Positions 13,464-56,661 of a stretch of DNA of 64,000 bases are shown here, piece after piece. Within the stretch, counting starts at the first letter, position 1. The number at the start of each line of letters is the position of its first letter. Origin of the DNA: Entomortierella parvispora E1425 (Eukaryota > Fungi > Mortierellomycota); contig BQFW01000015.1 in the NCBI GenBank assembly GCA_020891255.1, forward strand, positions 1,550,001 to 1,614,000, read 5' to 3'. Made by a program: the position numbers and the translations under genes. Under the pieces are notes generated by a model. That model was not told the origin of the DNA. It was given only the letters and a program-made list of their open reading frames with translations, and searched no databases.

Positions 13464-13535
13464 TCCCCGATAGTATAGTGGTGAGTATCTCCGCCTGTCA
13501 CGCGGAAGACCCGGGTTCAATTCCCGGTCGAGGAG
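13464..13535 (+). tRNA. tRNA-Asp (anticodon GTC), intronless
   Basis: 72-nt cloverleaf: anticodon stem TCCGC/GCGGA with loop CT-GTC-AC, T arm CCGGG-TTCAATT-CCCGG, G73 discriminator, followed by a T-run Pol III terminator. Confidence 0.97.
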
Positions 13536-13536
13536 C

Positions 13537-15321: not shown

Positions 15322-18300
15322 ATGATGACTTCCGCCATTTCATCTTCCCTGCCTTCCCACCCGAGCTCGGGAAGAAAGGGCATGGCAGTTTCTACTCCCA
15401 TCGACATTCCTAGAGCGACAACGACCTCCCACGACTCTCCTCGATCACCTCTTTTTACTTCGCCCTCGAGGCGATCCATGTCTCCAATGGGCGGTTCGGC
15501 CGTTGGAGTAATGAAAAAGTTCCTGAGACGAAAGAATCGCGACAACATCAACGATGACATCCATGACGATGACTTGGCTCTTTTTCAGCCCACCGCCACC
15601 ACCATTTCCCTCACTTCTTCCTCTGTATCTATGATGCAGTCCTTTGTCCTAGTTGGTGGATACGGTGCCGAACCTGGATCGACTGTTATTCTCGACAACA
15701 TCAGCAATGGCAGTGATGGTAGTCTCGATAGCCACTATGGCGACATGACAGATGTCATGGTGGGGATCGCCAAAACTGCGACCGTATCTACCGCTGCATC
15801 CACCACCCTTACGACCCACAGCCCCGGCTCAAGCTCGTCCAACTTCTTTGGACGTTTCAGTAAAGACAGGTCCTCGATCAATGGCCACAGCGATCTAGGC
15901 ATTCCTGGATCGAGCTCTCGCAAGGGACGCTCCCGCCACCTACCAGGGACTGAGAATGGGGACGGTCATGGATCTTTGACTGGAAGCTATGGCAGTAGCG
16001 GCAGTGGCCTTTTGGCAGCCACTGCTGCATCCATGCGCCGCAAGCTTAACAGACGATCTCTGTCCGCCGACAGCGCACCAACTGCACAACACCTTCAACA
16101 ACAAGAGCAGCGCACTCGAAAGCCAAACAAATCACGACCAGTGGACAGGAGCACAGGGATGGTGACAACACGATCTTTTGAGGTCTTGAGCGATCTGGAC
16201 AGTAAGAAAGGCATCCAGAGCCCAAAAGAGAAGGCCAGTGACGATTCGGGCGATAACAGCTTCATTACCGACTCCTCGTGGTCCTTGGACAGCCCGCTAG
16301 GCTCGCAAAATTTTGGTTCGTCTTACAATATCAGCCCAGATGGCCAGATCTTGGACACCACGGACAAACCCAAGCTCGACCCTCTACAGAAGCAAAAGGC
16401 GTCTACGGAAAAGGCTCCTCGCAGATCCATCGACAATGGATATTCGTCTCATAAGCAACGCATCCCCATCGGCGATGCTTGGGCATCGTCTCTTAATATG
16501 ATCGCCTCCATGCAAACCCATATCGACCCTGTCTCTGAAGAACCCATGGAAGTTGCCGCCCAACATGGTTCTCGCGTGAGGCCAGCTCGCCGCCAGAGTG
16601 AATCCGGCCTGGATCGACTTGAGAAGGTTGGGGACAGCGACAACTTTGTCCTTGTAGCAGAGACATCCTCGCCTACTCAATTTTACGACGCATCCCATAC
16701 TCGCGATGTTCTTCGAAAGTACCTGTCAGTCAAGAGCAGTGGCGATCTATTTGATGAGATGATCGAGTGTGGCTTTCCTTCAGATGGACTTGAGAGTCAG
16801 GACAACAACAACGATGTTCAGGGAGGCGAGGACGCTGGGCCAAAACCACTGGCGTCTGACGAATTGCCAAGCAACAAAGATGATGATGCCGACCAATCTT
16901 CACGCTCCCCAAACTGTCGGTACATGACCTTGAGAATTACACTTACTCCATGGCATGCCAGAGCTGATGAGTGCCAGCTCTATGGACCTGCAAGCGTGTC
17001 CGGTCGACTTCAACTCAAAACCAGAGTGAACAGGTTCTTTTCCCGATCCTCGAATCTCTCGAGCACCTCTTTGCAATCGAGCTTGATAAAGTATCCATCC
17101 TCAGTCTCTCTTCACTCGGCGCCTTTGCCCACTCGCAGTATTTCCTCAGTCCTTCTCTCGGCTGCCAATGACAGGCCGGATGTGGAAACAGAGTCGACCA
17201 AGCCAGAGAACCTTGACAAGATCCAAACGTTGACTTCTCGATCTATGTCAGTAGCCGAGCTACGAGAGATGGCCATGCAATCCACACCAACCAGCCCAAC
17301 AACCCCGACTTCTCCCATTACACCTTCTTCAGCACCGCCAAGCCGTCCTAGCAGCAGGGCAGCAGCCATGAATCCAAAGAAGAGTACCAGGAACTCTCCA
17401 ACGCCACCCCTTTCCTATCGTATCAAGGCCGACCACCAGAGGGATACCGTCAACAGCCGAATCTTGTCGCCACCACCCCTAACCACAACTTTTGCTCGCT
17501 CTCTTCGGTCGCCCTCCCCACTGACCATTAGAGATCAGAGCGATAACCAGAGCCAGAGCCCCCCAAGGAAAGGATCGTTGTCTGCATTATCACTACCAAT
17601 GTACAACGTGGAAACTGGTACACCTCTTTCACCGGAGGTAGCTTCGCCTCCCCCTCGTCGAAAGGGCTCAACGCCTGCCATCTTTTTCTCTCCTGCCGCC
17701 GCAGCGGCAGCAGCAGCTGCGACGGCCGCTCCAGTCTTTATTGCCGATGGCGAGGCAAAGCTGCCATTGCCCTCAGGGACTTCAGCTCGTAGATCCATGA
17801 CGATCAATGTGCCTTCTGCTCAAGCAGGGAGCCATCTTCCTCGGGCAATAAGTCCACGGTACCCTTTCCCAGAGCACTACCGCAACCAGGAGCGACTCCA
17901 AAATGCTCATCAGTATCGTCAAAAGGTGACATCGCCCACACTTCCTCCTCGAAAGAAGTCTGATCAAACCGACGACAGTATCCATCCCATGGCAAGGGTG
18001 AACGCGGCAGAGGTACACTCAGGGCTGAATGAGGGTCAGCATGGTTATTATGGTTGTTATGGATATGGATCCCTGTCCACACCAAACACTCCATTGGCCA
18101 CCTCGACCGCTTTCACAGGCCAAGGTGAACCTTGGTCGCCAACTTTTTCGGCATCGAAGGGTCAGTACCCTCGATCTGGTTCCATCGGGAGCGGGTTGGC
18201 TAGTGGACCTGTAGTACCAAGGGAGCAAGGACGAATTAGACGAGCTATCTCCAAGGATGATTACCTCTATCAGCAGCAACACCACCAAGAAATCTTGCGC

Positions 18301-19131
18301 GATGCCGAAAATGTTACTGGACTAGAGAACACCTACAGGTCTGGAGCTCAGGAATGGGCAGTGCCGTCTCTTGGCTCCCATTCTCAGAACAGAAGACCTT
18401 CTCATCAGGTGGATGGCACTTTCTACGCCCCACGAACAACCGCTTCATCCCCCATGGCGACGCAGCCTCTGGCCAAACAGCCAAGGGACCCTCGGCGCCC
18501 ATCATCCAGGTCCAATGTACGGGATACTGCATCTGCAGCCCCCTCGCCATCACCTTCGCCTCTCCTGAGCCCACAGCAACAACAGCACCGACAAGGCACC
18601 AGACTCTTTGAAGGAGAAGACGAACGAAGAGTTCAGCGTCAACAGAGTCAAGACTTTCCCTCGGCTATGAAGTTGCCTCCAGCACTCACGGCCAAAAGTG
18701 CATACCGTCAGCGACAAGGATCTACTCAGTCGAATGCCTCTTCCACCGCGACACTTTCCAACGACAACACCAGCATCAATGTCCCCAAGAGCAACTACTC
18801 TCCCCTTAATGAGACCATGAAAACGAGTAATGAGCATGACCGTTATGAAGGCGTGGAGGATTTTGGCCCCGCAGAGTACGATACCAGCATTGACCCTGAC
18901 CTGAGCTTTGGCAGCGTCCTGTCCACAGTTTCAATGCCAGAAGAGACTGAGGACAGAGGCTTTGTTGGGGGCCTGCAGCAGGGAGAAGAGACGGATTCAT
19001 ACCCGCTCCCTAGACCACGTCCTCGCCGTGGGCCATCCGAGCATAGGGACGCCGAAGCACGCAAGGGAGGATGCTGGCGTCCGATCGAGAGCCATCAAGC
19101 AGCGGCCATGACAACCTTTGCGTTTCCTTAG
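15322..19131 (+). CDS. 1269-aa Ser/Pro-rich, mostly disordered hypothetical protein with a short conserved-looking core
   Basis: Uninterrupted ORF. The core DVLRKYLS...FDEMIECGFPS...RYMTLRITLTPWHARADECQLYG stands out from the low-complexity flanks. Confidence 0.85.
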   Translation: MMTSAISSSLPSHPSSGRKGMAVSTPIDIPRATTTSHDSPRSPLFTSPSRRSMSPMGGSAVGVMKKFLRRKNRDNINDDIHDDDLALFQPTATTISLTSSSVSMMQSFVLVGGYGAEPGSTVILDNISNGSDGSLDSHYGDMTDVMVGIAKTATVSTAASTTLTTHSPGSSSSNFFGRFSKDRSSINGHSDLGIPGSSSRKGRSRHLPGTENGDGHGSLTGSYGSSGSGLLAATAASMRRKLNRRSLSADSAPTAQHLQQQEQRTRKPNKSRPVDRSTGMVTTRSFEVLSDLDSKKGIQSPKEKASDDSGDNSFITDSSWSLDSPLGSQNFGSSYNISPDGQILDTTDKPKLDPLQKQKASTEKAPRRSIDNGYSSHKQRIPIGDAWASSLNMIASMQTHIDPVSEEPMEVAAQHGSRVRPARRQSESGLDRLEKVGDSDNFVLVAETSSPTQFYDASHTRDVLRKYLSVKSSGDLFDEMIECGFPSDGLESQDNNNDVQGGEDAGPKPLASDELPSNKDDDADQSSRSPNCRYMTLRITLTPWHARADECQLYGPASVSGRLQLKTRVNRFFSRSSNLSSTSLQSSLIKYPSSVSLHSAPLPTRSISSVLLSAANDRPDVETESTKPENLDKIQTLTSRSMSVAELREMAMQSTPTSPTTPTSPITPSSAPPSRPSSRAAAMNPKKSTRNSPTPPLSYRIKADHQRDTVNSRILSPPPLTTTFARSLRSPSPLTIRDQSDNQSQSPPRKGSLSALSLPMYNVETGTPLSPEVASPPPRRKGSTPAIFFSPAAAAAAAAATAAPVFIADGEAKLPLPSGTSARRSMTINVPSAQAGSHLPRAISPRYPFPEHYRNQERLQNAHQYRQKVTSPTLPPRKKSDQTDDSIHPMARVNAAEVHSGLNEGQHGYYGCYGYGSLSTPNTPLATSTAFTGQGEPWSPTFSASKGQYPRSGSIGSGLASGPVVPREQGRIRRAISKDDYLYQQQHHQEILRDAENVTGLENTYRSGAQEWAVPSLGSHSQNRRPSHQVDGTFYAPRTTASSPMATQPLAKQPRDPRRPSSRSNVRDTASAAPSPSPSPLLSPQQQQHRQGTRLFEGEDERRVQRQQSQDFPSAMKLPPALTAKSAYRQRQGSTQSNASSTATLSNDNTSINVPKSNYSPLNETMKTSNEHDRYEGVEDFGPAEYDTSIDPDLSFGSVLSTVSMPEETEDRGFVGGLQQGEETDSYPLPRPRPRRGPSEHRDAEARKGGCWRPIESHQAAAMTTFAFP

Positions 19132-38581: not shown

Positions 38582-40414
38582 ATGTTTTGTGCTAGTAAGA
38601 ATCCTGCCACCTTGAGGCCGCGATCGTGGATCATTCATTCATTTTTTCACCGAGATCTCTCTCTAACCGCATTCTTTTGTCTTGATTGGTGATGGAAATA
38701 AACAATCAGTTTCTGGTGAGGCCCCCGAGCACCCCGTGGTGTCCAAGAAGAGCGGTCAGGTCTATGAGCGCCGCTTGATCGTCAAGTACATTGAAGACAA
38801 CAACAAGGATCCCGTCACTGGCGAGGAGCTTTCAGTCGAGGATCTTTTGGACATCAAGTCCTGTAAGTCCTTTTTTATTTTGTTTTTTCAAACACTACCT
38901 TGAGGAGGAGACAGAGAAACAAGGAAACTAACGAGTTGGCGAACCATTCGTTCCCCTTTCCTTGAATTAGCCCCCAGCACGGTCAAGCCCCGCCCTCCCA
39001 ACATGACCTCGATCCCCTCGATCCTCTCGGTCCTCCAGAACGAATGGGACTCGATCATGCTCGAGACCTTCACGATGAAGCAGCAATACCAGCAGGTTAG
39101 ACAGGAGCTCAGCCACGCTCTTTACCAGCACGATGCTGCTTGCAGAGTCATTGCTCGTTTGATGAAGGAGCGCGATGCTGCCCGCGAGTAAGTCTACCAC
39201 TATTCTCTTACATAAGAGACATGAACTCGATCACTAGTGATTTCCCAATGTCTAATGAGATGACCATTTTTCATTGGTCTATTAGGGCTCTTGCCAACGT
39301 CCAGGCTCATATCGGTACACAGGCACCTTCGGCAGTGGAGGATGTGAACATGGAGGATTCGGCGGCTTCTTCAGGAATGATCTCAAAGGAGGCTCGGGAG
39401 AAGATTGAGGCAACGACTGCGATCTTGTCCCAGAACCGGAGGCGCAAGCCCAAGGTCACTGCGGAGCAGGTTCAGACCTACAGCCAGCGCAAAGTCTTCC
39501 CTGGACTTCATGCTGCCCGTACACCCGGTATCACTGCTTTGGACATCTCTCTGGATCAGAACAAGAGCGATTTGATCTTGACTGGAGGACAGGATAAGAA
39601 CGCCATGGTCTTTAGTCAATCAGAGGAGAAGGTTGTGTCAACATTGAAGGGACATGGCAAGAAGATCACGCACGTTGCCTGGAATGAGCAGGAGAACCTC
39701 GAGCACGACGTTGTTTTGACCTCGTCGGAGGATCACACCGTCAAGATCTGGACAGCCTCCGGATCCAAGAGCGCCTACAGTGCTGCCCATACGATCAAGG
39801 CCCACGAGGCCTCTGTGACAGGATTGTGTGTCCACCCCACCAAGGCCTATGTTGCTTCGGCCTCGATGGATTCTACTTGGGCTTTCCATGACATTGAGAC
39901 TGGTTCGACCATGATGACGGCACAGTCTGGAGATGTGGTCAAGGGTTATAGTTCGGCTGCTTTCCACCCCGACGGTCTTTTGTTTGGCACAGGCACGGCA
40001 GAGTCAGGAGCAGTCAAGATCTGGGATATTCGTACCAAGGAGGCAGTGGCTAACTTTGAGGGTCACCACGGATCTGTGAGGACCATGACGTTCAGTGAAA
40101 ACGGTTATTTGATGGCGGCTGCTGGCGAGAACAACGAGGTCAGCATCTGGAACTTGAGAACCATGGATGTGGTGCAGAAGTTGCAGGTGGCTGAGGGTGG
40201 ACAGATCCAGTCTTTGGCCTGGGATCAATCTGGCACCTACTTGGGTGTGGGTGGTACCGATATTCGCATCTTCAAGGTCAAGACATGGAATGAGTTGGCC
40301 AACTTGACCGACAACACGGCCGAGATCACGAGCCTCAAGTTTGGACCCTTGGGTGACTACCTCGTTGCCGGTGGCATGGATCGCAGTCTCCGTGTTTTTG
40401 GAATCACCGAATAG
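38582..40414 (+). CDS. PRP19: Pre-mRNA processing factor 19 (U-box, coiled coil, WD40), multi-exon
   Basis: MFCA|[29 protein letters not shown]-box, [21 protein letters not shown] coil, and WD40 repeats. Confidence 0.97.
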
Positions 40415-40700
40415 ATAAACAAAACAACAACATTTTCAGTTCGTCGTTCGTCGCCTAGATCGATCAAAGAGTTCAAGAAATAACAGAGGAGAGAGAGAGA
40501 GAGAGTAAAGATACAACCTGCAATAAATAATTGAAACCAGAACTTGTCTTATTCTCTAGTTTTTTCTTGGGAGAGAGATCGACCGCACGGCGGGTGGCGG
40601 ATCCTCAATTGCAAAGCTCGCCTCAGTCCTGTGCTCAAAAAAAAAAAAAAAAAAAAAAAAAAAATCGCAAACAAGATTCCATATTTGGTGTTTGCTGCAT

Positions 40701-40810
40701 GCTTCGCGAAAGACTTCGCAAAGCGTTCATTCTTAGAACTGCTTCGCGAAATGTTTCGTGAAAGACTTTGCAAAGCGTTCATTCTTTGATTTGCTTCGCG
40801 AAATTTTTCT
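40701..40810. repeat. Imperfect tandem repeat (40-bp, 52-bp and partial units) built on the palindrome TTCGCGAA
   Basis: GCTTCGCGAAA begins at 40701, 40741 and 40793. The first two units share GACTT(C/T)GCAAAGCGTTCATTCTT. Confidence 0.85.
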
Positions 40811-41441: not shown

Positions 41442-43247
41442 CTATGAGAAGAGACGCTTGGTGTAGCTGTGCAATGAGTGCACACCACCCTCAGCCTGAG
41501 CGGCAGCGGTACGGCGCTCGAAGCGGACGGAACCGGCACGCATACCGTCCTTCATGGCCTCAATGCTGTCGACACCAATATCTTGGAGCGAGTGCTGGAG
41601 ACCAGTGTAGAGGTAAGGGACAAACTTCTTGATCGAACCCTTGTCGACAACGGATCCGGAGACACCCTGGGCGACCTTGACAGAGTCGGACTCGGAGTAG
41701 TAACGCTTGGTGGAGCCGTTACCGCCGTCACCGGCCTTCTCCATGGCATCGAGGGATCCCATACCGCGGTACTTCTTGAGACGCTGACCGTCCAAGTAGA
41801 AGTACTCACCGGGGGACTCGGTGGTACCGGCCAAGAGACCGCCCATCATGACACCAGAGGCACCGAGGGCCAAAGCCTTGGTGATGTGACCAATGTTACC
41901 GATACCGCCATCAGCAATGACGGGGACACCGTACTTGGAGGCGAACTGGGCAACCTTGTAGACGGCGGTACCCTGGGGACGACCGCAGGCCATGACCTCC
42001 TGGGTGATGCAGATGGAGCCAGAGCCCATACCGACACGGAGACCATCGGCACCGGCGGCAATGAGGCGAGCAGCCTGCTCCCAGACAACGACGTTACCGG
42101 CAATGACCTCCAAGTCAGGGAAGGTGGCCTTGATCCACTTGATCATATCGATCTGGAAGGAGGAGTTGCCCTGGGACGAATCCAAGACGACAACATCCAA
42201 TCCAGCGGCAACCAAGAGGGCGAGACGATCGCGATCATCGGGGCGGGTTCCGATGGCAGCACCGCAGAGCAATTGCTTGGACTTTGCGGCCTTGCTGGCC
42301 AAGGGGAAGTTCTGGTTCTTGAGGAGATCGGAACGGGCGAGGAGAGAGCAGAGCTCACCCTTGGAGTTGACGACGGGCAACTTGCCCTTCTTGGACTCGC
42401 AAAGGATCTTGTTGGCCTCCTCGAGGGTGACACCCTCGTTGGCAATGACGAGATCGGTGGTCATGCAAGACTTGAGGGTGGCGGTGTGGTCGTTGACAAA
42501 CTGAATGTCACGAGCAGTGACGATACCGACGAGCTTGGAGCCGAGCTTTCCGTTCTCGGTGATGGGGATGCCGCAGAAACCAAACTTCTCCTTGATGGCC
42601 AAGACATCGGCGACGGTGTGGTTCTCGGTCAAGCAGATGGGGTCGGTGATGAAGCCGTTCTCGAACTTCTTGACCTTGCGGACCATCTCGGCCTGCTGCT
42701 CGGGGGTGCAGTTGTGGTGGATGATACCAATGCCTCCAAGCAACTATGTCAAAAAAGATAGAGTTTTGGTCAGAAACGAGAGCGATTGAGAAAAACATTT
42801 ACGGTGCTTGCCCGATAAAGAAATTTGCGGGGAAACAGAGCGAGAAAAACATGCGCGCTACGACCACCTTGCAGGCAAAAGCAGGCCACGCCACCCCCAA
42901 GGTTGTGTTGTGCAACACTTGTCATGTCATGTCCTATTCAGAATGGCATGTGCACTTACTGCCATGGCAATAGCCATCTCGGTCTCGGTGACAGTGTCCA
43001 TGGGCGACGAGATGAAGGGGGTCTTGAGGGTGATGCGCTTGGTGATCCTGGACTCGAGCTGGACGGCATGAGCCTGGAAGTTGATGAATCCGGGAAGGAT
43101 CAAAAAGTCATTGTAGGTGAGGCCACCCTGGGTGACAGAGTCCATCAACTCCTCGGCCGAGAGACCGTCGCGACGGTTCTTGGTACCGCAGTGCTCGAGC
43201 TCTTGGAGAGCGAGGGTGTGATCGGGGTACTGGGCTTGGACGGTCAT
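41442..43247 (-). CDS. IMD: Inosine-5'-monophosphate dehydrogenase; intron ~42745-42958
   Basis: [20 protein letters not shown], two CBS domains, catalytic [12 protein letters not shown] loop, KKYRGMGS, and C-terminal HSYTKRLF. Strong codon bias. Confidence 0.98.
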
Positions 43248-46441: not shown

Positions 46442-49238
46442 TCAATGAACATGAACGATAATATCGTCGTATGGAGCTTCCTGCTTAGGGTGTAGAATTC
46501 CCATTGAAGAGAGAGCTATTGATAGTTGAACAGAAAAGGAGATCAATCAGTTTTGTACTTCGGATATGTGGGAAGGGTCTGAGCGGACTGAAGTGGCCAC
46601 AACTTACTCAAAATGTGATAGAACGCGTTCGCTGAAACATCGCGCCGTCCATGAATGGAAAATACGTCTGAAAATGAAAATGAGGTTGCAGCTCCCCCGG
46701 CATCCCGCAAAATCGAACGCACGAAATCCAAGAATTGACTTGTTTCTCGTTCAAGCGCAAGTCGTTCCTGGGTTAAGCCGGGGCCTTCTGCAAAACGACC
46801 CCCCTCATCCTGCGAGAGAGCCTGTTCGTGTCCACCGAGGGACCCAGTTTGTGAACCAGCCTCTCTTTCGCTGCTTCTTGGCCAGCCGGTGCGGTCTCGA
46901 GAAAGCGAGCGAGATTTTGAGCCAGAGCGAGAGCGAGCTATCCTTGGTCGTCGTCTGGCTTGAGCTCCATCTTCTGATTGCATCTCATCTTCGCTCTCCC
47001 ACTGTGGCCCTTGTCCAGCTGCTCGTGTTGTCCCGGCCGTTTGACCGAAAGCAGATTCAAAATCGTTCCAGTTCTGTTCAGAGCCAGAGCCATTCACCGA
47101 GGAGTCACTCTGGGCACCAGTGGTCACCAAGTAATCTGACCATGGCATGACTCCTCCAAAATGGCCGCTTCCAGAAACACCGCCGCCACCACCGCCTCCA
47201 ACGCCTAGGCCCACTGGGGTTCCTCCACTCTCAACACTGGGGTGCCGACGGCGGACCTCTGGCTCAAGAATGTCATATCCAAAATCATGCCCTACCCCAA
47301 GATCCATGTCGGCGAGCTGAAGAGACTGATACTGAGCTGGGATGTCGCGACCTGTTTTGCCCGCTCTTTTGTGCGCTTGAGTTTCGAATCCTGCATCGGC
47401 GAGGTTGGCTCTAAGTGACGTGCCTGCAGAATCCCAAAACTCATGCAACTCTGGAGCGCAATCTGCGAATGCAATTGGTTTTGATAGCATCCTTTCGATC
47501 CGAGCCTTAGCATCAGAAGTGGCCTGTTTCGTAGCAAGTTCACGGATCAACATAGCCTGGTGTCCCATAAAGTGTTCTTGGCCCTCTAACAGTTCCTCGC
47601 GTGAGAGCATGGTATTTTCATCGATGACCAGGCCGAGGGACTTTGTCTGTCGAGAGCCGATTCGGGCTCGTTTCTGAACATCATCCCTGTTGGCTTCAGG
47701 GTATAGGTGTCCTTGGTCATCTCCCCCAAGATCTTCTAGATCAACTTCGCCCACGAGAGATGGGACGACTTGAGCCTCAGACATAGGGTCTTGTTCGCCT
47801 GGTCTCTTTCGTTTTCCAAGATTGACTTCCAACTCAGGCAGAGTTGTCTCCATTCCTTCGTCGATGACAGGAAATCCTTCCTCGGGCATGTAATCCACAA
47901 GGTTTCCATCGGCATCAAAGTAAAGACTGGAAAAGCTCCATTGTCAATAACGAAAATAGAGTCTATGCTCATCTGCAAGAAAAATCACACTTTGGCAGAA
48001 TAGAACAGCATACCCGTGATCTTCGCTCAGGAGAGCATCGTCCGGTAAGTTGAAGTGAAATTTCTCATTGGAATCCGATCCTGGCTCTGTGGGTCGTTCG
48101 TCCAAGGTGATAGTTCGCCGTCGTTCATCGGAAGGTATAGCAATGACCACTAAGGGATTGGGGTTTGTGAATGTCAGTCCTTTTTTTTTACCCACATTGT
48201 TCTTTACGAGCTGATCAATTCAACTTACACTCAGAATGGACTGATGGAGTATCAGACTCGTCGTTTCCCAAGTCAAAGGTAAGGTGATCTGTCCATCCAA
48301 ACTCGACAGCCAACTCCTTCCTTCGGCTATGACGCTACGGTAGGAGAGGACTTGTGAGCAAATGTGCAGGACTCTGCGAAAAAAACAACCTTATATGTTT
48401 ACGAACTTACAGCAACTTCGAAGTCTAGGTCATGAGTAGCCCACATAGGTCTTGCGATAGTCTTTTCGATTTCCAAATCATACTCAAAAGTCACTGCGTC
48501 CAACCTGATGACAATGAAGAAGCGCGCCGAATGTCAGAGTCTAAAAAGCCAAGCAATCAACAAATGAGAGTTGCTTGTCTTACCGTGATTCTGGATTGAT
48601 CATGTCCAGATTGGCGGACTGCACCAATGCTAGGTCCTTCTTCAGTCGCATCCAAGTGTTGTTGACTTCACCTAATAAGATTGTCACGCAAAGTACCAAC
48701 GAGGCCAGCCGTGAGTAAAATCAGAGATGCAGATCCATTGCAGATCAAGCGGTCGCTCTTCGCATACCATAGTAAAAGTTGTACTGTTGGTTGTAGACGC
48801 GAATGACTCCCACCATTAGATTAGAGGAAAGCCGCAGAGCAAAAGGTTCCACAGGCTGAGATATGTCTTTGCTGTTTGATCAACAAGTCGTCCCAATCGC
48901 ATGCCGCGTTCGAGTTGTAGCACGATGAGAATGGGATTGAGGGGCTATTTCATCAGTGTCGTGGCAGCAAAAAGCCAGCTGAGGCAACACACACGTAAGA
49001 GGCACATACCATGTTTTCACTATGTCGACTTTGTTGACCTCCTTCTTGGACATTTTACTGACGCGAGAGCCGATGGTAGCAGCAAGCCTGTTGTTCAAAG
49101 AGCAACTCGGTTGAGAGGGTTGCATTTTCAGGAAAAAACAAAACGCGAAGTGGAGAGGACACAGGGGTTTCAAGGCGCGTACCAGATCAAACCAAGTTGT
49201 GTGTCCTTGCGCGTTAGGATCTCCTTGCTGTAGAACAT
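46442..49238 (-). CDS. REC8: Meiotic cohesin kleisin REC8, multi-exon
   Basis: N-domain MFYSKEILT...LGLIWLAATIG...PFALRLSSNLMVGVIRVYNQQY matches my recollection of S. pombe Rec8 (ALRLSSNLMIGV) better than Rad21 (ALRTSGHLLLG). C-terminal winged helix RRDVSANAFYHILT|LSSMGILHPKQEAPYDDI. Confidence 0.85.
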
Positions 49239-49443
49239 GACTCCCGAGTTGACGGAGGGACAAGGACTTGGGGGTTATGGGTCGCTTGGTGAAAGGGCGA
49301 ACGTGAGAAACGATCCTGCGGGAAGAAAGAAAAGCAGCAAAGACAAGGACATCATGTGATCCTTGCCACCAACCCAAAAAAAAAAAAAAAAAAAAAAAAA
49401 AAGGACGCTTCTCCCTCTCTCTGCTACTGCTCACTGTCCCGGG

Positions 49444-49463
49444 ACGCGCGTGGCGCATCGCGT
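49444..49463. promoter_or_regulatory. MCB-like CGCG elements (ACGCGCGT, TCGCGT) upstream of REC8
   Basis: Two CGCG-core motifs 206-225 bp upstream of the REC8 ATG. Function is inferred from yeast MBF-regulated cohesin genes. Confidence 0.35.
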
Positions 49464-49594
49464 TGCTCCTCGGCCATTGAAACTGTCGACTGGTGGCACC
49501 CGCATTGGCTCAGGTAGGCTCTCTCGGGCATCTGTCGCCCCAGGTGTTGTCCTTTGATAGCCACCGTTTGTCATTTTGTGCCGGTTGCTTACAG

Positions 49595-49897
49595 TGTTGA
49601 TGGCCAGGACGGTACGATACACCCTTAAGTAGAACCACTATATGTAGTTGCTCGCACGGCGTGGCCCTCTGCTCTTTATCCGTCTTATTCCACATTGATC
49701 GATACTGACAGAGGCCAGCACGGCGACCCTTAGGTAGCCCTCTCGTTATTTATTATTACCAATACATGATCCGTCTTATTCCACATTGATCGATACTGAC
49801 AGAGGCCAGCACGGCGACCCTTAGTCTGATTCTCACTCGTCACCTAGGATTGCCATATCCCGCACAGCGCCCCTCAAGCCTGCCCCCGTACGCAACA
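49595..49897 (+). repeat. 5' LTR (303 bp) containing a 56-bp direct repeat (49678-49733 and 49769-49824)
   Basis: TG...CA termini with a 5-bp terminal inverted repeat. Matches 53268-53570. Confidence 0.97.
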
Positions 49898-49903
49898 GTC
49901 TTT

Positions 49904-49920
49904 TGGTGATCTACGCAGGG
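49904..49920 (+). other. Primer-binding site candidate TGGTGATCTACGCAGGG
   Basis: Reverse complement CCCTGC-GTAGATC-A-CCA has the layout of a tRNA 3' end (T-stem strand, acceptor strand, A73, CCA). It lies 6 nt from the LTR. Confidence 0.65.
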
Positions 49921-49933
49921 GAGGGAAGGGACG

Positions 49934-52900
49934 ATGGTGAAAACAGATTTGTTAAAGGCGTTGACCGATGAGATCCCGAAGTGGCCCATAGCCAATAAGA
50001 AGGGAACCGAAGCTTCCGCTCGAGCATGGATCCGCGAGCTAGGAGACTTTTGGGCCGACGAAGGATTTTCGTTCCAGCTGTATGTGGTTCGGAGCAAGTT
50101 AGACGACCCCACGAAGAGTTGGTTGGCATGGTGGAGACACGCTGTCCCCGAGAATGAACAGAACTGGACCAAGTTAGTAAAGGATTTCGCGCAAGAACAT
50201 GTCCAGGAACGTACCCCCGCCACGACCAAAGCAGAGATTATGAGAATGACCCAAGGAGACAAAGAGCCTTCGGACGACTACGTTAAACGGTTGGAGCTGA
50301 AGTTAGCAATGCTGCCGAAGGACGAGGATGGGAAATACAAACTGAGTCCAGATGAAGAGGAGATGATCGCCCTTCAGTTTTGTACCGGTCTCCATCGCGA
50401 TCACAAGTTCAAGACGAGGAACACAGAGCCATCCAAGACTATTGCCGAAACGATCAAGAATGTATCCAAGCTGGGAGAGGTCAACCGCTGGGAGGACGTT
50501 CCCGACAGGCAGCGTGAGCTGAGAGATAGGAACTGGTCGGAAGAGACTCCAAGCCAAGGAGACAATATTTTGTTGGGTACCACGTCGGTATCGCGACCGC
50601 AGTTCGCTCGCTTCAAGAACGATTTCGGGAAAGAAGTTATCAACAATGCATCAGATATTGACGACTTGGTCAAGTTGTTTGGGGCCTGGACAATCACCGA
50701 CTTCACCGAAACCAAGCCAGAGAACCGAGTTACTGAAGCGATCAAGCGGCTCGATGTCAACGTTGCCCGAAGAGTACTTCACAACACTTCGTTATCGAGG
50801 CATGTGTCGTTGGCGAACATCCCGCCGCCGCCCGCGCCTCCCATACAAGGTAATCCGAACAGTGGAGCGGCTGTAGTCCTGGGGGGGTCTTATCCACCTT
50901 GCCCCGAATGCAACCAGATGGGACATGGGCGAACCCGTTGCCCCCGAGTGGAATGTCGCAATTGTGGCCAGCTGGGTCATATTTCGTATAACTGTCCAAA
51001 CAACAGAGCGAACACAACGGTTGCACAAACAGAGCTGAATTCGAGAGCAGAGCAAGATTCGTCGAGGCGGGTTCGATTTGTTAATGGAGACGAAACCACT
51101 AGTACTCTTGTGACCACGAGAGCCACGGGACGAACAGCACCAGTTTCAGGGACTCTGCAAAGAAATAGTGCAGATCGGAGCAGTGTGCCAACGGGGATAG
51201 GATCCCAGAGGAGAGCCGAGACCGCAGGGGTAGCGCCACCTATTCGAAGAATGGATGTGGACCCAGAGGTCGAACAGGAACAACCACAGGAGGGACCCCA
51301 GATGCCGAGAAAGCTAAAGATCAAGGAGATTGCCGCAATGAAGTTGAGGAAAGTTCGCATTCCAGTTGTGCCAGACCCCGAGATCATACGACAAGTCGAA
51401 GAGTTAGAATTCGACCCTGAGATCGTGGACAAGCACCGAGGAAGGATGGCCCCACAATTGAAGGCTGCCATAGGAGCGATTTGGACGGAGCGTCGAAACA
51501 AACGCAAGGTTGCCAAGGAGAAGCGAGGAGTAACGTTCGCGAATCGCGCCAGTGTTCAAGCGGGAGACCAGGTTACGGCATGGATAGGCCACCACCGATT
51601 GGACAACTGCATTGTCGACCCAGGCAACGAGAAGACAATGATTTCAGAGCATGCTGCCAGGCAAGTTGGTCTGGAGGTGCGTGCCACCGTAAACCAGATC
51701 AGACAGGCCGACGGGAAACCTATTTCCTTGGTGGGCACTACCGGACAATTTACATTCTCGGTAGCTGGCACCGAGGTAGAGATGAGTAGAGGTATGAACG
51801 TCATCGACTGCAAGCGATCGTATGATATGTTGCTTGGTGACGACTGGCTGAAAGCTGTCCGTGCGAAAGGGAAGTGGACCAGCAACGCTGTGGCATACTA
51901 CGTCACTCGGAATGGCAAGAAGGTCAAGCTAGGAATCGACCCCACTTTCGAGAGTAGCGATGACTCGAGCAGTGACGACTCAGGTAGCGAGGACGACGAC
52001 AATATCTACCCGGTTTTTGACGAAGACGACGAAGTCGAGCAAGGCCACTCGTTGCGAGTGCAAGAGGTCCAGGTCGAGAGCAATGGAGTGATAGACGTCG
52101 TGAAGGAGTTGTCCCCCGAACAGCACAGTGAGGTCGACGTACTATTAGAGTGCAACAAAGACCGATTCACCATGGATCTGAGCGAGTTGGAGGTCACCGA
52201 CGTGTTTGAGCGTGAGATGAATGTCAGACCAGGGGCAAAACCGATCTATCCCACCGGATGCAGACAGTACGCGCCGAAGGAAAAAGAATACACGAAAAAG
52301 AATCTCGACGAGGAATTAGAGACTAGCAGGATCATTCCTACGGAATCTGAATGGTGCGCACCCTTGTCCTTTGCACCAAAGGAAGATGGCAACATTCGGA
52401 AGTGTGTCGCGTATATCGGATTGAGCAAAGTAACCGAGCGAGGAAGCTGGCTCATCAGAGACAAGACGGCCGGGAGCGTTACCACAGTATTGTTCCAGCG
52501 CGTCCTTTGCAGATTTGATATGCCTGACACCATTCGAACAGATGGTGGATCAGCGTTCAGGACCGAGTTCAAAACAATATGTGAGCTGTCCGACACCCAA
52601 CACTTTGTGGGGTCCACAAAAGAAGCACACAGCCAGGGGTCAGTGGAAGCGATGAATAAGCAGCTAGAAGAGAGATTGAGACTGACCTCCAGAGTGCCGC
52701 AGAACCAGCTGGACCAGTATTTGCCGCAGGCTGTGCCCGACATCGACAACCACGTTGAGGCAGCAACAGGAATGTCCCCGATGCAAGCGCTGATGGGATA
52801 CATCGGGCAGTCGGCGTTGAGCCGACACCTGGCGCAACAATGGCAAGAGGCAGCCCCTATTGCTGAGCAGTTGACTGAAGACCGAGAAGTGATGGCCAGA

Positions 52901-53305
52901 TTTGCCTGTCAACGAGAAGGCATCCAGGAACAAGCGTATCTGAACCGTCTCAAGGCTAATGAGTGGACGAAGAGGTACTGCGACCTGAACGTTCGACCTG
53001 CCTCCTTCGAGGTTGGAGAACAAGTATGGGTGTATAACCTATCTATCACGTCTGGATTTGGCCGCCAGTGGACACCGCGTTGGTTAGGACCATTCAAGGT
53101 AGCATGGGTAGGAAAGGCAGGGTCCTACGGCGTGCGCACGGGAGGACCAAATTATGATATTATTAATGGTGTGGAAAAGTTGAATAGAGATATGTTAAAG
53201 AGGTGGTGGGAAGAAGAGCGCATTGAAGATGTGAACTGCCAGAGGCCGGGTTCACATCTTGGGGGGGTGTTGATGGCCAGGACGGTACGATACACCCTTA
53301 AGTAG
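49934..53305 (+). CDS. 1123-aa Gag-protease-deltaPol polyprotein of the LTR element
   Basis: Capsid major homology region MTQGDKEPSDDYVKRL, two CCHC knuckles (50900-50995), protease IVDPGN...LLGDDW, an RT N-terminal remnant ending RKCVAYIGLSKVTERGSW fused to integrase IRDKTA...RTDGG...GSVE, and GPF motif WLGPFKV. No YxDD, RNase H or HHCC. Confidence 0.93.
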   Translation: MVKTDLLKALTDEIPKWPIANKKGTEASARAWIRELGDFWADEGFSFQLYVVRSKLDDPTKSWLAWWRHAVPENEQNWTKLVKDFAQEHVQERTPATTKAEIMRMTQGDKEPSDDYVKRLELKLAMLPKDEDGKYKLSPDEEEMIALQFCTGLHRDHKFKTRNTEPSKTIAETIKNVSKLGEVNRWEDVPDRQRELRDRNWSEETPSQGDNILLGTTSVSRPQFARFKNDFGKEVINNASDIDDLVKLFGAWTITDFTETKPENRVTEAIKRLDVNVARRVLHNTSLSRHVSLANIPPPPAPPIQGNPNSGAAVVLGGSYPPCPECNQMGHGRTRCPRVECRNCGQLGHISYNCPNNRANTTVAQTELNSRAEQDSSRRVRFVNGDETTSTLVTTRATGRTAPVSGTLQRNSADRSSVPTGIGSQRRAETAGVAPPIRRMDVDPEVEQEQPQEGPQMPRKLKIKEIAAMKLRKVRIPVVPDPEIIRQVEELEFDPEIVDKHRGRMAPQLKAAIGAIWTERRNKRKVAKEKRGVTFANRASVQAGDQVTAWIGHHRLDNCIVDPGNEKTMISEHAARQVGLEVRATVNQIRQADGKPISLVGTTGQFTFSVAGTEVEMSRGMNVIDCKRSYDMLLGDDWLKAVRAKGKWTSNAVAYYVTRNGKKVKLGIDPTFESSDDSSSDDSGSEDDDNIYPVFDEDDEVEQGHSLRVQEVQVESNGVIDVVKELSPEQHSEVDVLLECNKDRFTMDLSELEVTDVFEREMNVRPGAKPIYPTGCRQYAPKEKEYTKKNLDEELETSRIIPTESEWCAPLSFAPKEDGNIRKCVAYIGLSKVTERGSWLIRDKTAGSVTTVLFQRVLCRFDMPDTIRTDGGSAFRTEFKTICELSDTQHFVGSTKEAHSQGSVEAMNKQLEERLRLTSRVPQNQLDQYLPQAVPDIDNHVEAATGMSPMQALMGYIGQSALSRHLAQQWQEAAPIAEQLTEDREVMARFACQREGIQEQAYLNRLKANEWTKRYCDLNVRPASFEVGEQVWVYNLSITSGFGRQWTPRWLGPFKVAWVGKAGSYGVRTGGPNYDIINGVEKLNRDMLKRWWEEERIEDVNCQRPGSHLGGVLMARTVRYTLK

Positions 53306-53570
53306 AACCACTATATGTAGTTGCTCGCACGGCGTGGCCCTCTGCTCTTTATCCGTCTTATTCCACATTGATCGATACTGACAGAGGCCAGCACGGCGAC
53401 CCTTAGGTAGCCCTCTCGTTATTTATTATTACCAATACATGATCCGTCTTATTCCACATTGATCGATACTGACAGAGGCCAGCACGGCGACCCTTAGTCT
53501 GATTCTCACTCGTCACCTAGGATTGCCATATCCCGCACAGCGCCCCTCAAGCCTGCCCCCGTACGCAACA
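53268..53570 (+). repeat. 3' LTR (303 bp)
   Basis: Base-by-base comparison with the 5' LTR showed no differences. Confidence 0.97.
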
Positions 53571-54217
53571 ACAGCTGTGCTCTTTTCGCTCAGATACAGC
53601 CATGCAGCGAGGAGAAGTGAGAAAAAGGACTACAGAGAGAGGGAGGGTAAACATGGGCCGATGGTCGACGTTGGTCTTCTTCTCTTCTTTCATTTGTCTC
53701 TCGTCTCCGTTCTCCGTGCAGCACAGGTGCAGCGATTGCTCTGACCTCTACCCATTTTTATATTTCCACACATTACAGTTCTCCTGATTTTCGGATTGCA
53801 GAGCACTGCACAACCCCCTTGACAAGGAAGGAAGGCAAACCAAAGAGAAAAAGGAACCAGTTTGACCCTCCCTTTGCATTCATATCTCGACTGCAATGGA
53901 AGCTGCTGGGTCGGTGTCCATATCGATCCCAACCCCACCCCACCTCTTTTTTTTTTTTTTTTTTTTTTTTCCCTTGTTGTTCGTTATTTCTCAACTATAA
54001 TACCCTCTTGTTCACAATTGGCCTTTACTCCAAATGAATCTTGTCCTTCGCACTCCATGCCATCCACGCCTGTCTCAGAACTGAATAGTTTGTCTTCCAT
54101 CTCTGCCAACTATCATCTCAACCGAGCCTTGCGACAATACCTTGCGACAGTCCTGCACATCCCGTCACCACCCTAACCCTGCGTCCTCTTCCCGCTGTAA
54201 AAAATTTGACATACATC

Positions 54218-56661
54218 ATGCTCTCTTCAGATATCGCCACCACCCTCCAAGAGGACCAAAGTGTGACCCCTCCTTCAGCTCTTAATCCTTACTCGCCCTC
54301 ATCAGAGACAGAAACATCCCGAAGTGTAGCACCTTCTGCGCCTGCGCCTCTCACTGTCGAAGCACAGTCCACGCAGCCGCCCCAGGAAGTGTCATCACCC
54401 ACAAAGCCTAATTCTTCTGACAATGCACCAAAATTCAGGAAGCGCAAGCGGCCACGTCTCGACATCATGTCTCGCAGCTTTGATATTCTTCATCTCATAT
54501 TTCAGAAACTCAAAGAAGGACAGGAAGACGAGGACGACTGCTGTGATATGATCTCGTCGCAAAATTCCTTGGCACACGATTGTTCGGGAACAAGGAGCAT
54601 GGCCAAGAACCCATTCGAATCAACTACCATTCATAAGGGACCTCATGCAGCAGCCACGTGCATTGCTGTGTCGACCATGGCCAAGAATCGTTCTCATGAT
54701 CATGTGCAGGATGCTTTCTCAAAGATCTGTCAGGTCAATCGAGCATTCGCCAAAGTGGGACTTCCCTTTCTTTGGGAGAGTCCTCGAATTCGGACCAGTC
54801 GTCAACTGGACAGATTCGCGTATACATTGGAGCAACGAGGATTCAAATACTACGACTACCTACACGATATTGTCATTCGCCAAGGATCAGTCCCTGACGC
54901 GAATCACGAAAGTCTTTGGTGGGGTCATGCAAGGGTCCGCGCCATCCTGTTCAAGATCGCGACCCATTGTGGAGACCGACTGAGATTCGTGGATTGTAAC
55001 TGGGCTGGGTCCGCTTTTGATCATAAGCTCATGAAGACGTTGAGCGAATCTTCGACTGTGTTTGCGTGCTTGAAATACTTGCGCCTCGAACCACTTCAGA
55101 TGCCATCCAAGGAACGATCACTGAACGAGAAAGATTTCAATGCCCTCATGAACTGTTGCCCACACCTCGAAACTCTTGAATTAGAGGAAGGGTACGAAGT
55201 TTCGGATCGATCCATGATCCATCTACTCATGGTTTGTGAGAAACTGTTGCACCTCACTTTTCCATCTTGTGGTCTCTTTGGCTGGGTTGACGCCATTGAA
55301 ATGGGCTTTGGGGACAGTCTGCGGTCTCTAAAGATATATGACAGTACCTGCGAGTCCTATCTCCTCTCCTCCTCCTCCTCAGTCTCCCTTTATTCTTCCT
55401 CCTCATCTTCGTCCTCAATCTCGATTCGGACACCCACACTCCCTTACGAGTACCCGGCCATGGGGTGTTACTCTTTCCGCAAAGCCAGCCTTCCTAATCT
55501 CGAGACCTTGAACCTCGAGACTACTGGACCAAGATTCATTCGGGCCATCCTCACAAAGCCTCGACTACCAGCTCTGCGATCCCTTCGGATCCCCCACGCC
55601 TCTAACGAGATCATTACAATTCTTGCGAGCGGTTTAGCATCTCAACTGACCTTTTTTGAGACCAAACTAGATGAAACTGCGGACGCGGAGGCCTTTCAGC
55701 GTTTTTCAAACAATATGACCATGCCAACCGCAGCTCAAACCTTGGATTGCAGTCCTGGACCGGTCTTGGGCTTGATCGGTCGAACTATCACCACTCTTTC
55801 CGCCAACAGTTCCCTCCGACTTTTGGACACGATCGCCGAGAGCTGTCCAAATTTGGAAGATTTGACTCTATGGGGAGGAAGCGTTTCGAGGAATCCACCT
55901 TACCCAAGAGGGAGTGCCCGTTCAGCCGATCCACAGAGTGGAATGATTTACTTGATCGAGATGTGCCCTATCAAGCGGTTGAGGCTCGTGAACGCGTATT
56001 TGGGATTGGGACCTCCGTTTTGGCAAGCCTGCGGAGAATTTGGAAAAAAGATCAGGGTGCTAGATATTGAACTCTTGGATTGCAAAGGGATGAATGCTTG
56101 GGGCATGTTTGAAGGACTGAGCCAATGCAAAAACCTGCGCTGGTTGCGATTAACAGAGCTTTTGGGAGTCCAAAAAGAGGTATATTCATTGATCTGAACC
56201 GCATGGGCCACCGTGAGAAGGGGTTTGCTGTTGTTTTTGATTTGAGAATGGAACGCTGACGATATTCTTCGTTTCTCTTTCATTGGTATGGGCAGATCAT
56301 GGTGGCCGGCCTCGTATGTCTAAAACGACTTTCCGCCCTTCATCTGAGCATTCCTGATCGAGAAGTCGGCCGGTTCTCAATGACGATGGAAGAGATTGCC
56401 GAGTTTCTGTCTCATTTCTCAGACCTCTCGGAAGTGGACTTGATCATGCCCAAGCCCTGGCCCAACTCGGCCTCGACCACGCCACGGACATCCATGGATC
56501 TGAGCGAGCGCAAAAAGGAGCAGAAGCAGCAGCAACGATATCGACAATATGGAGGACTATCGTTTGCACGCGCAGAGCCGACCATGGTCTTCAAGGACGT
56601 GTTTGGACAAAACATCTACGGCAATGTGGAGTGGTCTGCACCCATGTTTTCGTACTATTGA
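54218..56661 (+). CDS. F-box-like / RNI-like LRR protein; intron ~56179-56296; possible extra upstream exon 54057-54087
   Basis: Interrupted F-box (FDILHLIFQKL...ICQVNRAFAKVGLPFLWESP) and repeated LRR motifs (CPHLETLEL, LPNLETLNL, CPNLEDLTL, CKNLRWLRL). Confidence 0.8.

What the first reader, a model, noticed from the sequence alone, without database searches (positions are those of the whole stretch)
49595..53570. Young LTR retrotransposon that keeps Gag and protease but has deleted RT core, RNase H and half of integrase, in frame
Seen: LTRs that appear identical, an intact TSD, and one 1123-codon ORF with no stops. The RT remnant ends at RKCVAYIGLSKVTERGSW (degenerate from CVDYRxLNKVT...YPLP) and is fused at ~52450 directly to the integrase segment LIRDKTAGSV (normally AxPLxxKTA). 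YxDD, RNase H, HHCC and the first catalytic Asp are gone. The Pol remnants look decayed, yet the frame is open and the Gag MHR and both CCHC knuckles are perfect. Inference: a non-autonomous element that supplies its own capsid, with cis-preferential packaging, and borrows RT/IN from a helper. This is analogous to plant TR-GAG-type elements. Identical LTRs mean the deleted form itself probably transposed recently.
Basis: partly seen in the sequence, partly recalled or inferred. Interest (0 to 1): 0.75.

Follow-up and report, generated by a model that had tools for sequence, protein, structure and literature searches.

The report
Gag-protease-only parasitic LTR retrotransposon in fungus
This is a recently inserted, internally deleted Ty3/gypsy retrotransposon of the soil fungus Entomortierella parvispora that still makes its own capsid and protease but must borrow reverse transcriptase and integrase; at least four copies share the deletion, so it is a well-supported example of a kind of genomic parasite already known from plants and mice.

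Summary
The element spans 49595-53570. Its two 303-bp LTRs are 100% identical, start TG and end CA, and are flanked by a 4-bp target-site duplication, ACAG. One 1123-codon ORF runs 49934-53305.

Full-length relatives in the same genome (Entomortierella parvispora, 1583 and 1603 aa) show two in-frame deletions. One removes 21 aa after K724. The other removes about 542 aa at 52450|52451: the RT catalytic core, RNase H, the integrase zinc domain and the first integrase Asp.

Three more gene models on three other contigs carry both junctions, so the deleted form itself has spread. One of them keeps three ancestral residues, which implies at least two waves.

Polarised with an outgroup, the deleted lineage changed 48 times against 3 in the Pol remnants, but 8 against 5 in Gag-NC-PR. 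All family-invariant Gag, NC and PR residues kept by the full-length form are also kept here.

Two points are not shown: cis-preferential packaging, and the existence of an intact helper. Two details are corrected: the "degenerate" RT motif is a family trait, and the last ~34 codons are a frame-shifted tail.

This is a new member of a known kind.

The parts
49591..49594 (+). 5' copy of the target-site duplication, ACAG
   Evidence: identical to 53571-53574.
49595..49897 (+). 5' LTR, 303 bp, TG...CA. It contains a 56-bp direct repeat (49678-49733 and 49769-49824).
   Evidence: 303/303 identical to the 3' LTR; internal repeat.
49904..49915 (+). Putative primer-binding site TGGTGATCTACG, 6 nt after the LTR. 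The primer was not identified.
   Evidence: Sequence read. It does not match the only tRNA in the window (tRNA-Asp). No inverted repeat for self-priming was found. The assignment is an inference.
49934..53305 (+). Single ORF of 1123 codons: Gag (CA-like + NC), PR, RT N-terminal remnant, integrase remnant, frame-shifted tail
   Evidence: Pfam finds Retrotrans_gag, zf-CCHC and gag-asp_proteas, with no RVT_1 or rve hit up to E = 1.
50123..50320 (+). Gag capsid-like domain (Pfam Retrotrans_gag, aa 64-129), including the MHR Q107-x3-E111-x7-R119 at 50252-50290
   Evidence: 34 bits against a cut-off of 24.1. The MHR is conserved in all 16 family members. Residues 1-300 are 98-99% identical to the full-length relatives.
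50900..50995 (+). Two CCHC zinc knuckles of the nucleocapsid (aa 323-336 and 341-354)
51578..51853 (+). Retropepsin-like protease (aa 549-640). The active-site motif is D562-P-G (51617-51625) and the LLGDDWL motif lies at 51830-51850.
   Evidence: gag-asp_proteas, E = 2e-4, below the gathering score. Both motifs are conserved across 13 relatives. 14 of 15 invariant columns are kept, the same as in the full-length form.
52105..52106 (+). Site of the first in-frame deletion: 21 aa (DNKAATVSQYTIGGHPIDINP in P0002) are missing between K724 and E725.
   Evidence: shared by all four deleted-form proteins.
52106..52450 (+). RT N-terminal remnant (aa 725-839), ending ...CVAYIGLSKVTERGSW
   Evidence: Aligns to P0002 746-860 and to the Ty3 RT N-terminus. 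17:1 lineage-specific changes; 22/29 invariant columns kept against 28/29.
52450..52451 (+). Main deletion junction, W839|L840. About 542 aa are missing: RT motif A, YMDD, RNase H, integrase HHCC and the first catalytic Asp.
   Evidence: The parental flanks ...ERESW|PLPN and ...WVEAW|PIRDK share E-x-W-P, a protein-level microhomology.
52451..53200 (+). Integrase remnant (aa 840-~1089): the C-terminal part of the catalytic core with D870 and E905 (35 apart), plus the C-terminal domain with WLGPF (53081-53095)
   Evidence: 31:2 lineage-specific changes. The invariant HPQ..GQ motif is replaced by EAH..GS.
53201..53305 (+). Frame-shifted C-terminal tail (aa ~1090-1123). It reads through the polypurine tract into U3 of the 3' LTR. 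The ancestral-frame stop TGA is at 53224-53226.
53261..53267 (+). Polypurine tract (GGGGGGG) directly abutting the 3' LTR
   Evidence: its function is inferred from position.
53268..53570 (+). 3' LTR, 303 bp
53571..53574 (+). 3' copy of the target-site duplication, ACAG

Best explanation
This is a non-autonomous Ty3/gypsy (Metaviridae-type) LTR retrotransposon of Entomortierella parvispora. It descends from a full-length Gag-PR-RT-RH-IN element by two in-frame internal deletions. Its RNA encodes one 1123-aa polyprotein: capsid-like Gag with an MHR, a nucleocapsid with two CCHC knuckles, a protease, and catalytically dead RT and integrase remnants. The proposed cycle is as follows. The element is transcribed from the 5' LTR. 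Its own Gag, processed by its own protease, helps build particles together with the Gag-Pol of the full-length relative. The helper's RT/RNase H copies the deleted RNA, which regenerates identical LTRs. The helper's integrase inserts it with a 4-bp duplication. Shown: the structure, the exact deletions, at least four copies on four contigs with the same junctions, and strongly asymmetric decay of the Pol remnants against preserved Gag/NC/PR. Inferred: trans-supply of RT and IN, co-assembly, and any cis preference of Gag for its own RNA.
For: The deletion was mapped against P0002, P0011, P0003 and Ty3. Three further proteins from other contigs of the same genome share both junctions. P0009 keeps ancestral L758, I888 and P898 where the other three copies are derived. 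The deleted lineage therefore transposed in at least two waves, and the remnants went on changing in between. The relative-rate test gives 48:3 changes in the Pol remnants against 8:5 in Gag-NC-PR, or 19% versus 3% at polarisable sites (p = 4e-9). Family-invariant columns kept, deleted form versus full-length: Gag 13/13 v 13/13, NC 6/7 v 6/7, PR 14/15 v 14/15, RT-N 22/29 v 28/29, IN core 16/23 v 23/23, IN C-term 8/10 v 10/10. The Gag capsid region is 98-99% identical to the candidate helper, as co-assembly would require. The organism and the long-read assembly are documented.
Against: Four things are therefore untested: shared LTR/PBS, independent TSDs of the other copies, dN/dS, and nucleotide microhomology at the junction. 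Both annotated full-length gene models look imperfect. P0011 lacks the protease active-site stretch and part of the RT N-terminus, and P0002 diverges after about aa 1545 and loses the integrase C-terminal domain. An intact helper is therefore not demonstrated. The near-identity of Gag 1-300 could reflect recent recombination with the helper rather than selection on the parasite's Gag. Short-read polishing of a Nanopore assembly can homogenise repeat copies and inflate their identity. The PBS primer was not identified.
Confidence: 0.85

Rival explanations
1. The structure and mobility are the same, but Gag/PR is not needed by the parasite. The 5' third looks conserved only because template switching between co-packaged helper and parasite RNAs recently overwrote it with helper sequence. 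The element is then effectively a LARD-like passenger that still happens to carry coding sequence.
For: Gag 1-300 is 98-99% identical to the full-length relatives, while NC/linker is 82-89% identical. Yet both regions are about equally diverged (38-40% identity) from the outgroup. That pattern fits a more recent common ancestor for the 5' part.
Against: NC/linker and PR are clearly diverged from the helper (changes 4:5 and 3:0, plus unresolved ones). Even so, they keep every invariant residue that the helper keeps. The zinc knuckles and both protease motifs are intact. Homogenisation alone does not explain conservation there.
Confidence: 0.2
2. The deletion arose once in place and was copied to other chromosomes by segmental duplication or ectopic gene conversion. 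The deleted form itself never retrotransposed.
Against: The window copy has its own TSD flush with perfect TG...CA LTRs, and the LTRs are identical. The four copies lie on four different multi-megabase contigs. Nothing else in the 64-kb window is duplicated with it. P0009 differs by lineage-informative substitutions.
Confidence: 0.04
3. It is a host-domesticated Gag-protease gene (like Arc, PEG10 or other co-opted Ty3 gag genes) rather than a mobile parasite.
For: Gag/NC/PR are conserved while Pol decays. The copies are annotated as ordinary hypothetical protein genes.
Against: The intact identical LTRs, TSD, PPT, multiple near-identical copies on different contigs and ORF run-on into the LTR are hallmarks of an active transposon. 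A fixed single-copy host gene would not show them. No orthologue was found outside this genome.
Confidence: 0.03

Closest known systems
Plant TR-GAG elements (terminal-repeat retrotransposons with a GAG domain), e.g. Arabidopsis AT5TE33540 (PMC8704663)
   Same: Both are non-autonomous LTR retrotransposons that retain an intact gag ORF, have a closely related autonomous relative in the same genome, and transpose without their own RT/IN.
   Different: TR-GAGs encode GAG only. This element also keeps protease and in-frame RT and integrase remnants in one 1123-aa fusion ORF. It is Ty3/gypsy-type (AT5TE33540 is a copia element) and comes from a mortierellomycete fungus.
Sugar-beet non-autonomous LTR families retaining GAG/PROT, some with partly decayed POL domains (PMC13570524)
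   Same: The domain content is the same: GAG/PROT is kept and RT, RH and INT are lost or decayed. That paper treats such elements as part of a continuum of non-autonomous derivatives.
   Different: Those are plant families, often without a traceable autonomous partner. Here the partner lineage is 87-88% identical overall, the deletion breakpoints can be mapped to the residue, and the frame is still open across the remnants.
Mouse IAP 1-delta-1 proviruses (PMC6466679)
   Same: A single in-frame internal deletion creates a novel fusion ORF. Retrotransposition is non-autonomous, yet the deleted form outnumbers full-length forms among new insertions. The fusion protein is reported to act in cis.
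   Different: The IAP deletion removes part of gag and part of pol, whereas here gag and PR are entire. IAP is a vertebrate endogenous retrovirus. No functional data exist for the fungal element.
Ty3 of Saccharomyces cerevisiae (PDB 7q5b, 4ol8)
   Same: The full-length relative aligns over RT-RH-IN with Ty3 Gag-Pol (E = 1e-84). It has the same domain order, a CCHC nucleocapsid and a D,D35E integrase.
   Different: In this family gag and pol form one continuous ORF. The protease motif is D-P-G. The TSD is 4 bp, whereas Ty3's is 5 bp by general knowledge. The window copy lacks the RT core, RNase H and the integrase N-terminal half.

Membership tests
Ty3/gypsy (Metaviridae-type) LTR retrotransposon | Direct long terminal repeats ending TG...CA, flanked by a short target-site duplication | tested here: met
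   303-bp LTRs, 100% identical, TG...CA, 4-bp TSD ACAG.
Ty3/gypsy (Metaviridae-type) LTR retrotransposon | Gag with a capsid domain and a CCHC nucleocapsid | tested here: met
   Pfam Retrotrans_gag and zf-CCHC score above their cut-offs. The MHR and two knuckles are present.
Ty3/gypsy (Metaviridae-type) LTR retrotransposon | Pol domain order PR-RT-RH-IN | tested here: met
   The order is seen in the full-length relatives P0002 and P0003. The window copy keeps the same order in what remains: PR, RT N-terminus, IN C-terminal part.
Ty3/gypsy (Metaviridae-type) LTR retrotransposon | PBS next to the 5' LTR and PPT next to the 3' LTR | tested here: inconclusive
   A G7 purine run abuts the 3' LTR, and a TGG-starting stretch lies 6 nt after the 5' LTR. 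No matching tRNA or self-priming repeat was found.
Autonomous retrotransposon | Catalytically complete RT, RNase H and integrase | tested here: not met
   No RVT_1, RNase H or rve hit. RT motif A, YMDD, RNase H, HHCC and the first integrase Asp fall in the deleted 542 aa.
TR-GAG | LTR-bounded non-autonomous element with an intact GAG ORF | tested here: met
TR-GAG | GAG is the only coding capacity (single ORF encoding GAG, per PMC8704663) | tested here: not met
   The ORF also encodes a conserved protease and 366 codons of RT and IN remnants.
Non-autonomous element that has itself transposed | Several copies at different loci share the same deletion junction | tested here: met
   P0001, P0008, P0009 and P0010 lie on four contigs and all carry both junctions.
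Non-autonomous element that has itself transposed | Each copy has its own TSD and unrelated flanks | not testable with these tools
   This is shown only for the window copy. DNA of the other loci was not retrievable.
Helper-parasite pair | An intact autonomous element with matching LTR, PBS and packaging region in the same genome | tested here: inconclusive
   Only one close full-length cluster exists, P0002/P0011, and both gene models show local defects. LTR and PBS could not be compared.

The most novel reading that the evidence does not exclude
The open reading frame across the dead Pol remnants may itself be selected. One possibility is that a premature stop would expose the genomic RNA to nonsense-mediated decay. 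Another is that the retained integrase part (D870, E905 and the GPF C-terminal domain), fused behind Gag-PR, acts as a hook. That hook would bring the parasite's polyprotein, and with it its RNA, into the helper's particles or pre-integration complex. This would be a cis-acting fusion protein comparable to the one in IAP 1-delta-1, and here a testable basis for a parasite out-competing its helper (4 deleted versus 2 full-length gene models). The support is one simulation: under neutral substitution, 372 remnant codons stay stop-free only 1-3% of the time after the observed 48-70 replacements. The remnants carry only in-frame length changes relative to the full-length forms until about codon 1090.
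Probability: 0.15. Interest if true: 0.6.

Novelty: new member of a known kind. Interest (0 to 1): 0.4.

Why it matters
This is a clean case in which an LTR-retrotransposon parasite can be compared residue by residue with its autonomous lineage. The breakpoints are exact. The parasite outnumbers the full-length form among annotated gene models. Gag, nucleocapsid and protease are held constant while the adjacent Pol remnants lose invariant residues. That pattern argues that encoding one's own capsid and protease pays off for a non-autonomous element. The idea has been discussed for plant TR-GAGs and for mouse IAP 1-delta-1. My limited paper searches turned up no comparable report for fungi, and none for Mortierellomycota. 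In practice, four "hypothetical protein" gene models in the E. parvispora annotation are transposon ORFs and should be masked.

Tried and rejected
- **Fetching other copies.** Shared LTR/PBS, other TSDs, dN/dS and nucleotide microhomology therefore stay untested.
- **Recombinant 3' half.** I considered that the IN remnant came from a second, divergent functional element. The changes are almost all on the deleted lineage at sites where full-length and outgroup agree (31:2), and invariant motifs are lost, so I rejected this.
- **Other copies in the window.** There is no other copy, solo LTR or full-length relative (blastn, tblastn).
- **Primer.** The only tRNA in the window (tRNA-Asp, 13464-13536) does not match the putative PBS. 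No inverted repeat for Tf1-like self-priming was found.
- **Metagenome scans.** The family alignment and the exact junction 27-mer both found nothing.
- **Word search with the junction-bearing piece alone** (aa 661-1123): no shorter fragments were found.
- **Rfam** on 49000-54200: no hits.
- **My own error, corrected.** I first placed the second integrase Asp in VVVVVDSFTKW, which is deleted. The D-35-E spacing shows it is D870 in IRTDGG, which is retained.
- **Searches not run.** I did not run the exhaustive representative-protein search, because the protein is not open. I did not run structure prediction, because domain identities were already clear from sequence.


Full report
**1. What is in the sequence**

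The element occupies window 49595-53570 on the + strand.
- Its two 303-bp LTRs (49595-49897 and 53268-53570) are identical at all 303 positions and run TG...CA.
- A 4-bp duplication, ACAG, flanks them at 49591-49594 and 53571-53574. The chance of such a match is 1/256.
- Each LTR contains a 56-bp internal direct repeat.
- A G7 purine run abuts the 3' LTR. A TGG-starting stretch lies 6 nt after the 5' LTR.
- One ORF of 1123 codons runs from 49934 to 53305 and ends 38 nt inside the 3' LTR.
- Pfam finds Retrotrans_gag, zf-CCHC and a retropepsin-type protease. It finds no RT, RNase H or integrase domain even at E = 1.
- Rfam finds nothing in 49000-54200.

**2. Where it comes from**

The word-indexed protein search returned the window's own protein on a 2,802,632-bp contig. 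It also returned a 1583-aa Entomortierella parvispora protein (P0002, EMPS_05409) that is 90% identical over the first 860 residues. That contig length equals the N50 contig of the published E. parvispora E1425 assembly, which was built from Nanopore reads and polished with Nanopolish and Pilon into 19 contigs. The rest of the window looks like ordinary gene-dense fungal chromosome, with Prp19-like WD40 and Myb proteins and one tRNA-Asp. This is not human sequence.

**3. The deletions**

P0002, its cluster-mate P0011 (1603 aa) and a metagenomic relative P0003 (1691 aa) have the full Ty3/gypsy order: Gag, CCHC, PR, RVT_1, RNase H, Integrase_H2C2, rve. P0002 aligns with Ty3 Gag-Pol (PDB 7q5b) at E = 1e-84.

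Against these, the window ORF has two in-frame deletions.
- The first removes 21 aa between K724 and E725, at nt 52105|52106.
- The second removes about 542 aa between W839 and L840, at nt 52450|52451.
- The lost block holds RT motif A (YTGLDGF), YMDD, both RNase H-like domains, the HHCC zinc domain and the first integrase Asp (IFIDLI).
- The second Asp (D870, IRTDGG) and the Glu (E905) remain, exactly 35 residues apart. The C-terminal domain with WLGPF also remains.
- The parental sequences either side of the main junction are ...ERESW|PLPN and ...WVEAW|PIRDK. They share E-x-W-P. This fits a microhomology-guided template switch, but I could test it only at the protein level.

- The RT motif it called degenerate, CVAYIGLSKVT, is CVAY(I/V)GLNKVT in the full-length relatives and in the outgroup too. 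It is a family trait, not decay.
- Near codon 1090 (about nt 53198-53203) the ORF leaves the frame used by P0011 and P0003. The ancestral frame would stop at TGA 53224-53226. The new frame runs through the polypurine tract into U3.

**4. Has the deleted form spread?**

The window protein's 90% cluster has four members from four different contigs.
- P0001 is the window copy.
- P0008 (EMPS_02644) is 1123 aa and differs by one residue, which falls in the LTR-encoded tail.
- P0009 (EMPS_03849) is 924 aa.
- P0010 (EMPS_00648) is 908 aa.

All four carry both junctions.

P0009 differs at seven positions, five of them in the remnants (p = 0.007). At three of these (758, 888, 898) it keeps the residue found in the full-length forms and the outgroup, while the other three copies are derived. 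The deleted lineage therefore produced copies at two or more different times, and the remnants went on changing in between.

Only two full-length-type gene models exist in the database for this genome. A search with the junction-bearing piece alone found no shorter fragments. Two metagenome scans found nothing.

**5. What is constrained and what is not**

I polarised the differences between the deleted and full-length lineages with P0003 as outgroup.

| Region | Changes on deleted lineage : full-length lineage | p |
|---|---|---|
| Gag 1-300 | 1:0 | |
| NC/linker | 4:5 | |
| PR | 3:0 | |
| RT N-terminal remnant | 17:1 | 1e-4 |
| Integrase core remnant | 19:2 | 2e-4 |
| Integrase C-terminal part | 12:0 | 5e-4 |

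Per polarisable site, the rate is 19% in the remnants against 3% in Gag-NC-PR (Fisher p = 4e-9).

I then aligned 13 more distant relatives (42-74% identical in RT-IN) and counted family-invariant columns.

| Region | Invariant columns kept, deleted form | Kept, full-length forms |
|---|---|---|
| Gag | 13/13 | 13/13 |
| NC | 6/7 | 6/7 |
| PR | 14/15 | 14/15 |
| RT N-terminal remnant | 22/29 | 28/29 |
| Integrase core remnant | 16/23 | 23/23 |
| Integrase C-terminal part | 8/10 | 10/10 |

The integrase HPQ..GQ signature has become EAH..GS. The MHR, both zinc knuckles, the protease active-site block and the LLGxDWL block are intact.

**6. Two open points**

*Selection or recombination in Gag.* Gag 1-300 is 98-99% identical to the full-length forms, while NC/linker is 82-89% identical. 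Yet both regions are about equally far from the outgroup, at 38-40% identity. This could mean very strong constraint on capsid co-assembly. It could equally mean that the 5' part was recently exchanged with the helper by recombination. Only synonymous-site data can decide, and I could not obtain the DNA.

*Why the frame is still open.* In a neutral substitution simulation, the 372 remnant codons stayed free of stop codons in only 1-3% of runs after 48-70 amino-acid changes. The remnants carry only in-frame length changes relative to the full-length forms before about codon 1090. This hints at selection for an open frame, or at residual function of the remnants. It is the basis of the novel reading, and I rate it unlikely but not excluded.

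**7. Mechanism**

The best explanation is a helper-dependent parasite. It supplies Gag, NC and PR from its own RNA and depends on RT/RNase H and integrase made by the full-length lineage.
- Shown: anatomy, copy sharing, and differential constraint.
- Inferred: trans-complementation, co-assembly, and cis preference.

The helper itself is not secured. P0011's model skips the protease active site and part of the RT N-terminus in a way that looks like a frameshift bridged by a predicted intron. P0002's model departs from the family after about residue 1545. These anomalies may be real defects or residual Nanopore indel errors in repeats.

**8. Comparison with what is known**

- Plant TR-GAG elements keep only GAG, and one has been caught transposing in an Arabidopsis ddm1 mutant (PMC8704663).
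- Mouse IAP 1-delta-1 proviruses carry an in-frame deletion that makes a gag-pol fusion protein. That protein acts in cis, and this subtype causes most new IAP insertions (PMC6466679).
- A recent survey of mobile elements in Cryptococcus neoformans found no mobilisation of clearly non-autonomous copies (PMC12810828).

The present element is therefore a new member of a known kind. It fails the strict TR-GAG definition because it encodes more than GAG. In domain content it works like the beet GAG/PROT families, and in its in-frame fusion ORF like IAP 1-delta-1.

**9. Limits**

Every statement about other copies rests on annotated protein models, which AUGUSTUS may have shaped with predicted introns.
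- LTR identity bounds the age only loosely, because the LTR is short.
- Repeat copies may have been homogenised by short-read polishing.

Noticed in passing
window 51617-51625 (aa 562-564), and proteins P0002, P0003, P0012-P0025: The protease active-site triplet is D-P-G rather than the usual D-T/S-G. It is invariant (IDPG or VDPG) in every relative that covers the site, 15 of the 16 aligned, down to 42% identity in the RT-IN block. This looks like a clade-specific retropepsin variant, not a defect.
   Followed up: partly
window 49678-49733 and 49769-49824 (and 53351-53406 and 53442-53497 in the 3' LTR): A perfect 56-bp direct repeat lies inside each LTR, separated by 35 bp of AT-rich sequence. 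It may be a duplicated U3 regulatory module.
   Followed up: no
window 53198-53305: Near the end of the ORF the frame changes relative to the full-length relatives. The protein therefore ends in about 34 novel residues, the last 12 of which are encoded by the 3' LTR. The single difference between this copy and P0008 (R1116K) lies in that LTR-encoded part.
   Followed up: yes
proteins P0002 (EMPS_05409) and P0011 (EMPS_07844), not in the window: Both annotated full-length gene models have local anomalies. P0011 has an out-of-frame-looking stretch and gap at aa ~511-565, which removes the protease active site, and a gap at ~807-838. P0002 loses similarity after aa ~1545. These may be frameshifts bridged by predicted introns or assembly indels.
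   Followed up: partly
proteins P0009 and P0010, not in the window: Two of the four deleted-form gene models end early inside the integrase remnant, after residues ~924 and ~903. P0010 is otherwise identical to the window protein. The cause (stop, frameshift or gene-model artefact) is unknown.
   Followed up: no
window 13464-13536 (+): A tRNA-Asp (GTC) gene followed by a T-run. Its 3' end does not match the element's putative primer-binding site.
   Followed up: yes
window 40699-40809: A 52-bp tandem repeat of 2.1 copies (88% matches) lies just downstream of the Prp19-like WD40 ORF (39140-40414).
   Followed up: no
window 15322-19131 (+) and 54206-56197 (+): Two long ORFs (1269 aa and 663 aa) have no Pfam match at E <= 1e-4. 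The 663-aa ORF lies about 640 bp downstream of the element's 3' LTR, so LTR read-out transcription could reach it.
   Followed up: no
window 41442-42743 (-) and 41478-42761 (+): Two ORFs of about 430 codons overlap almost completely on opposite strands. I did not work out which, if either, is real.
   Followed up: no
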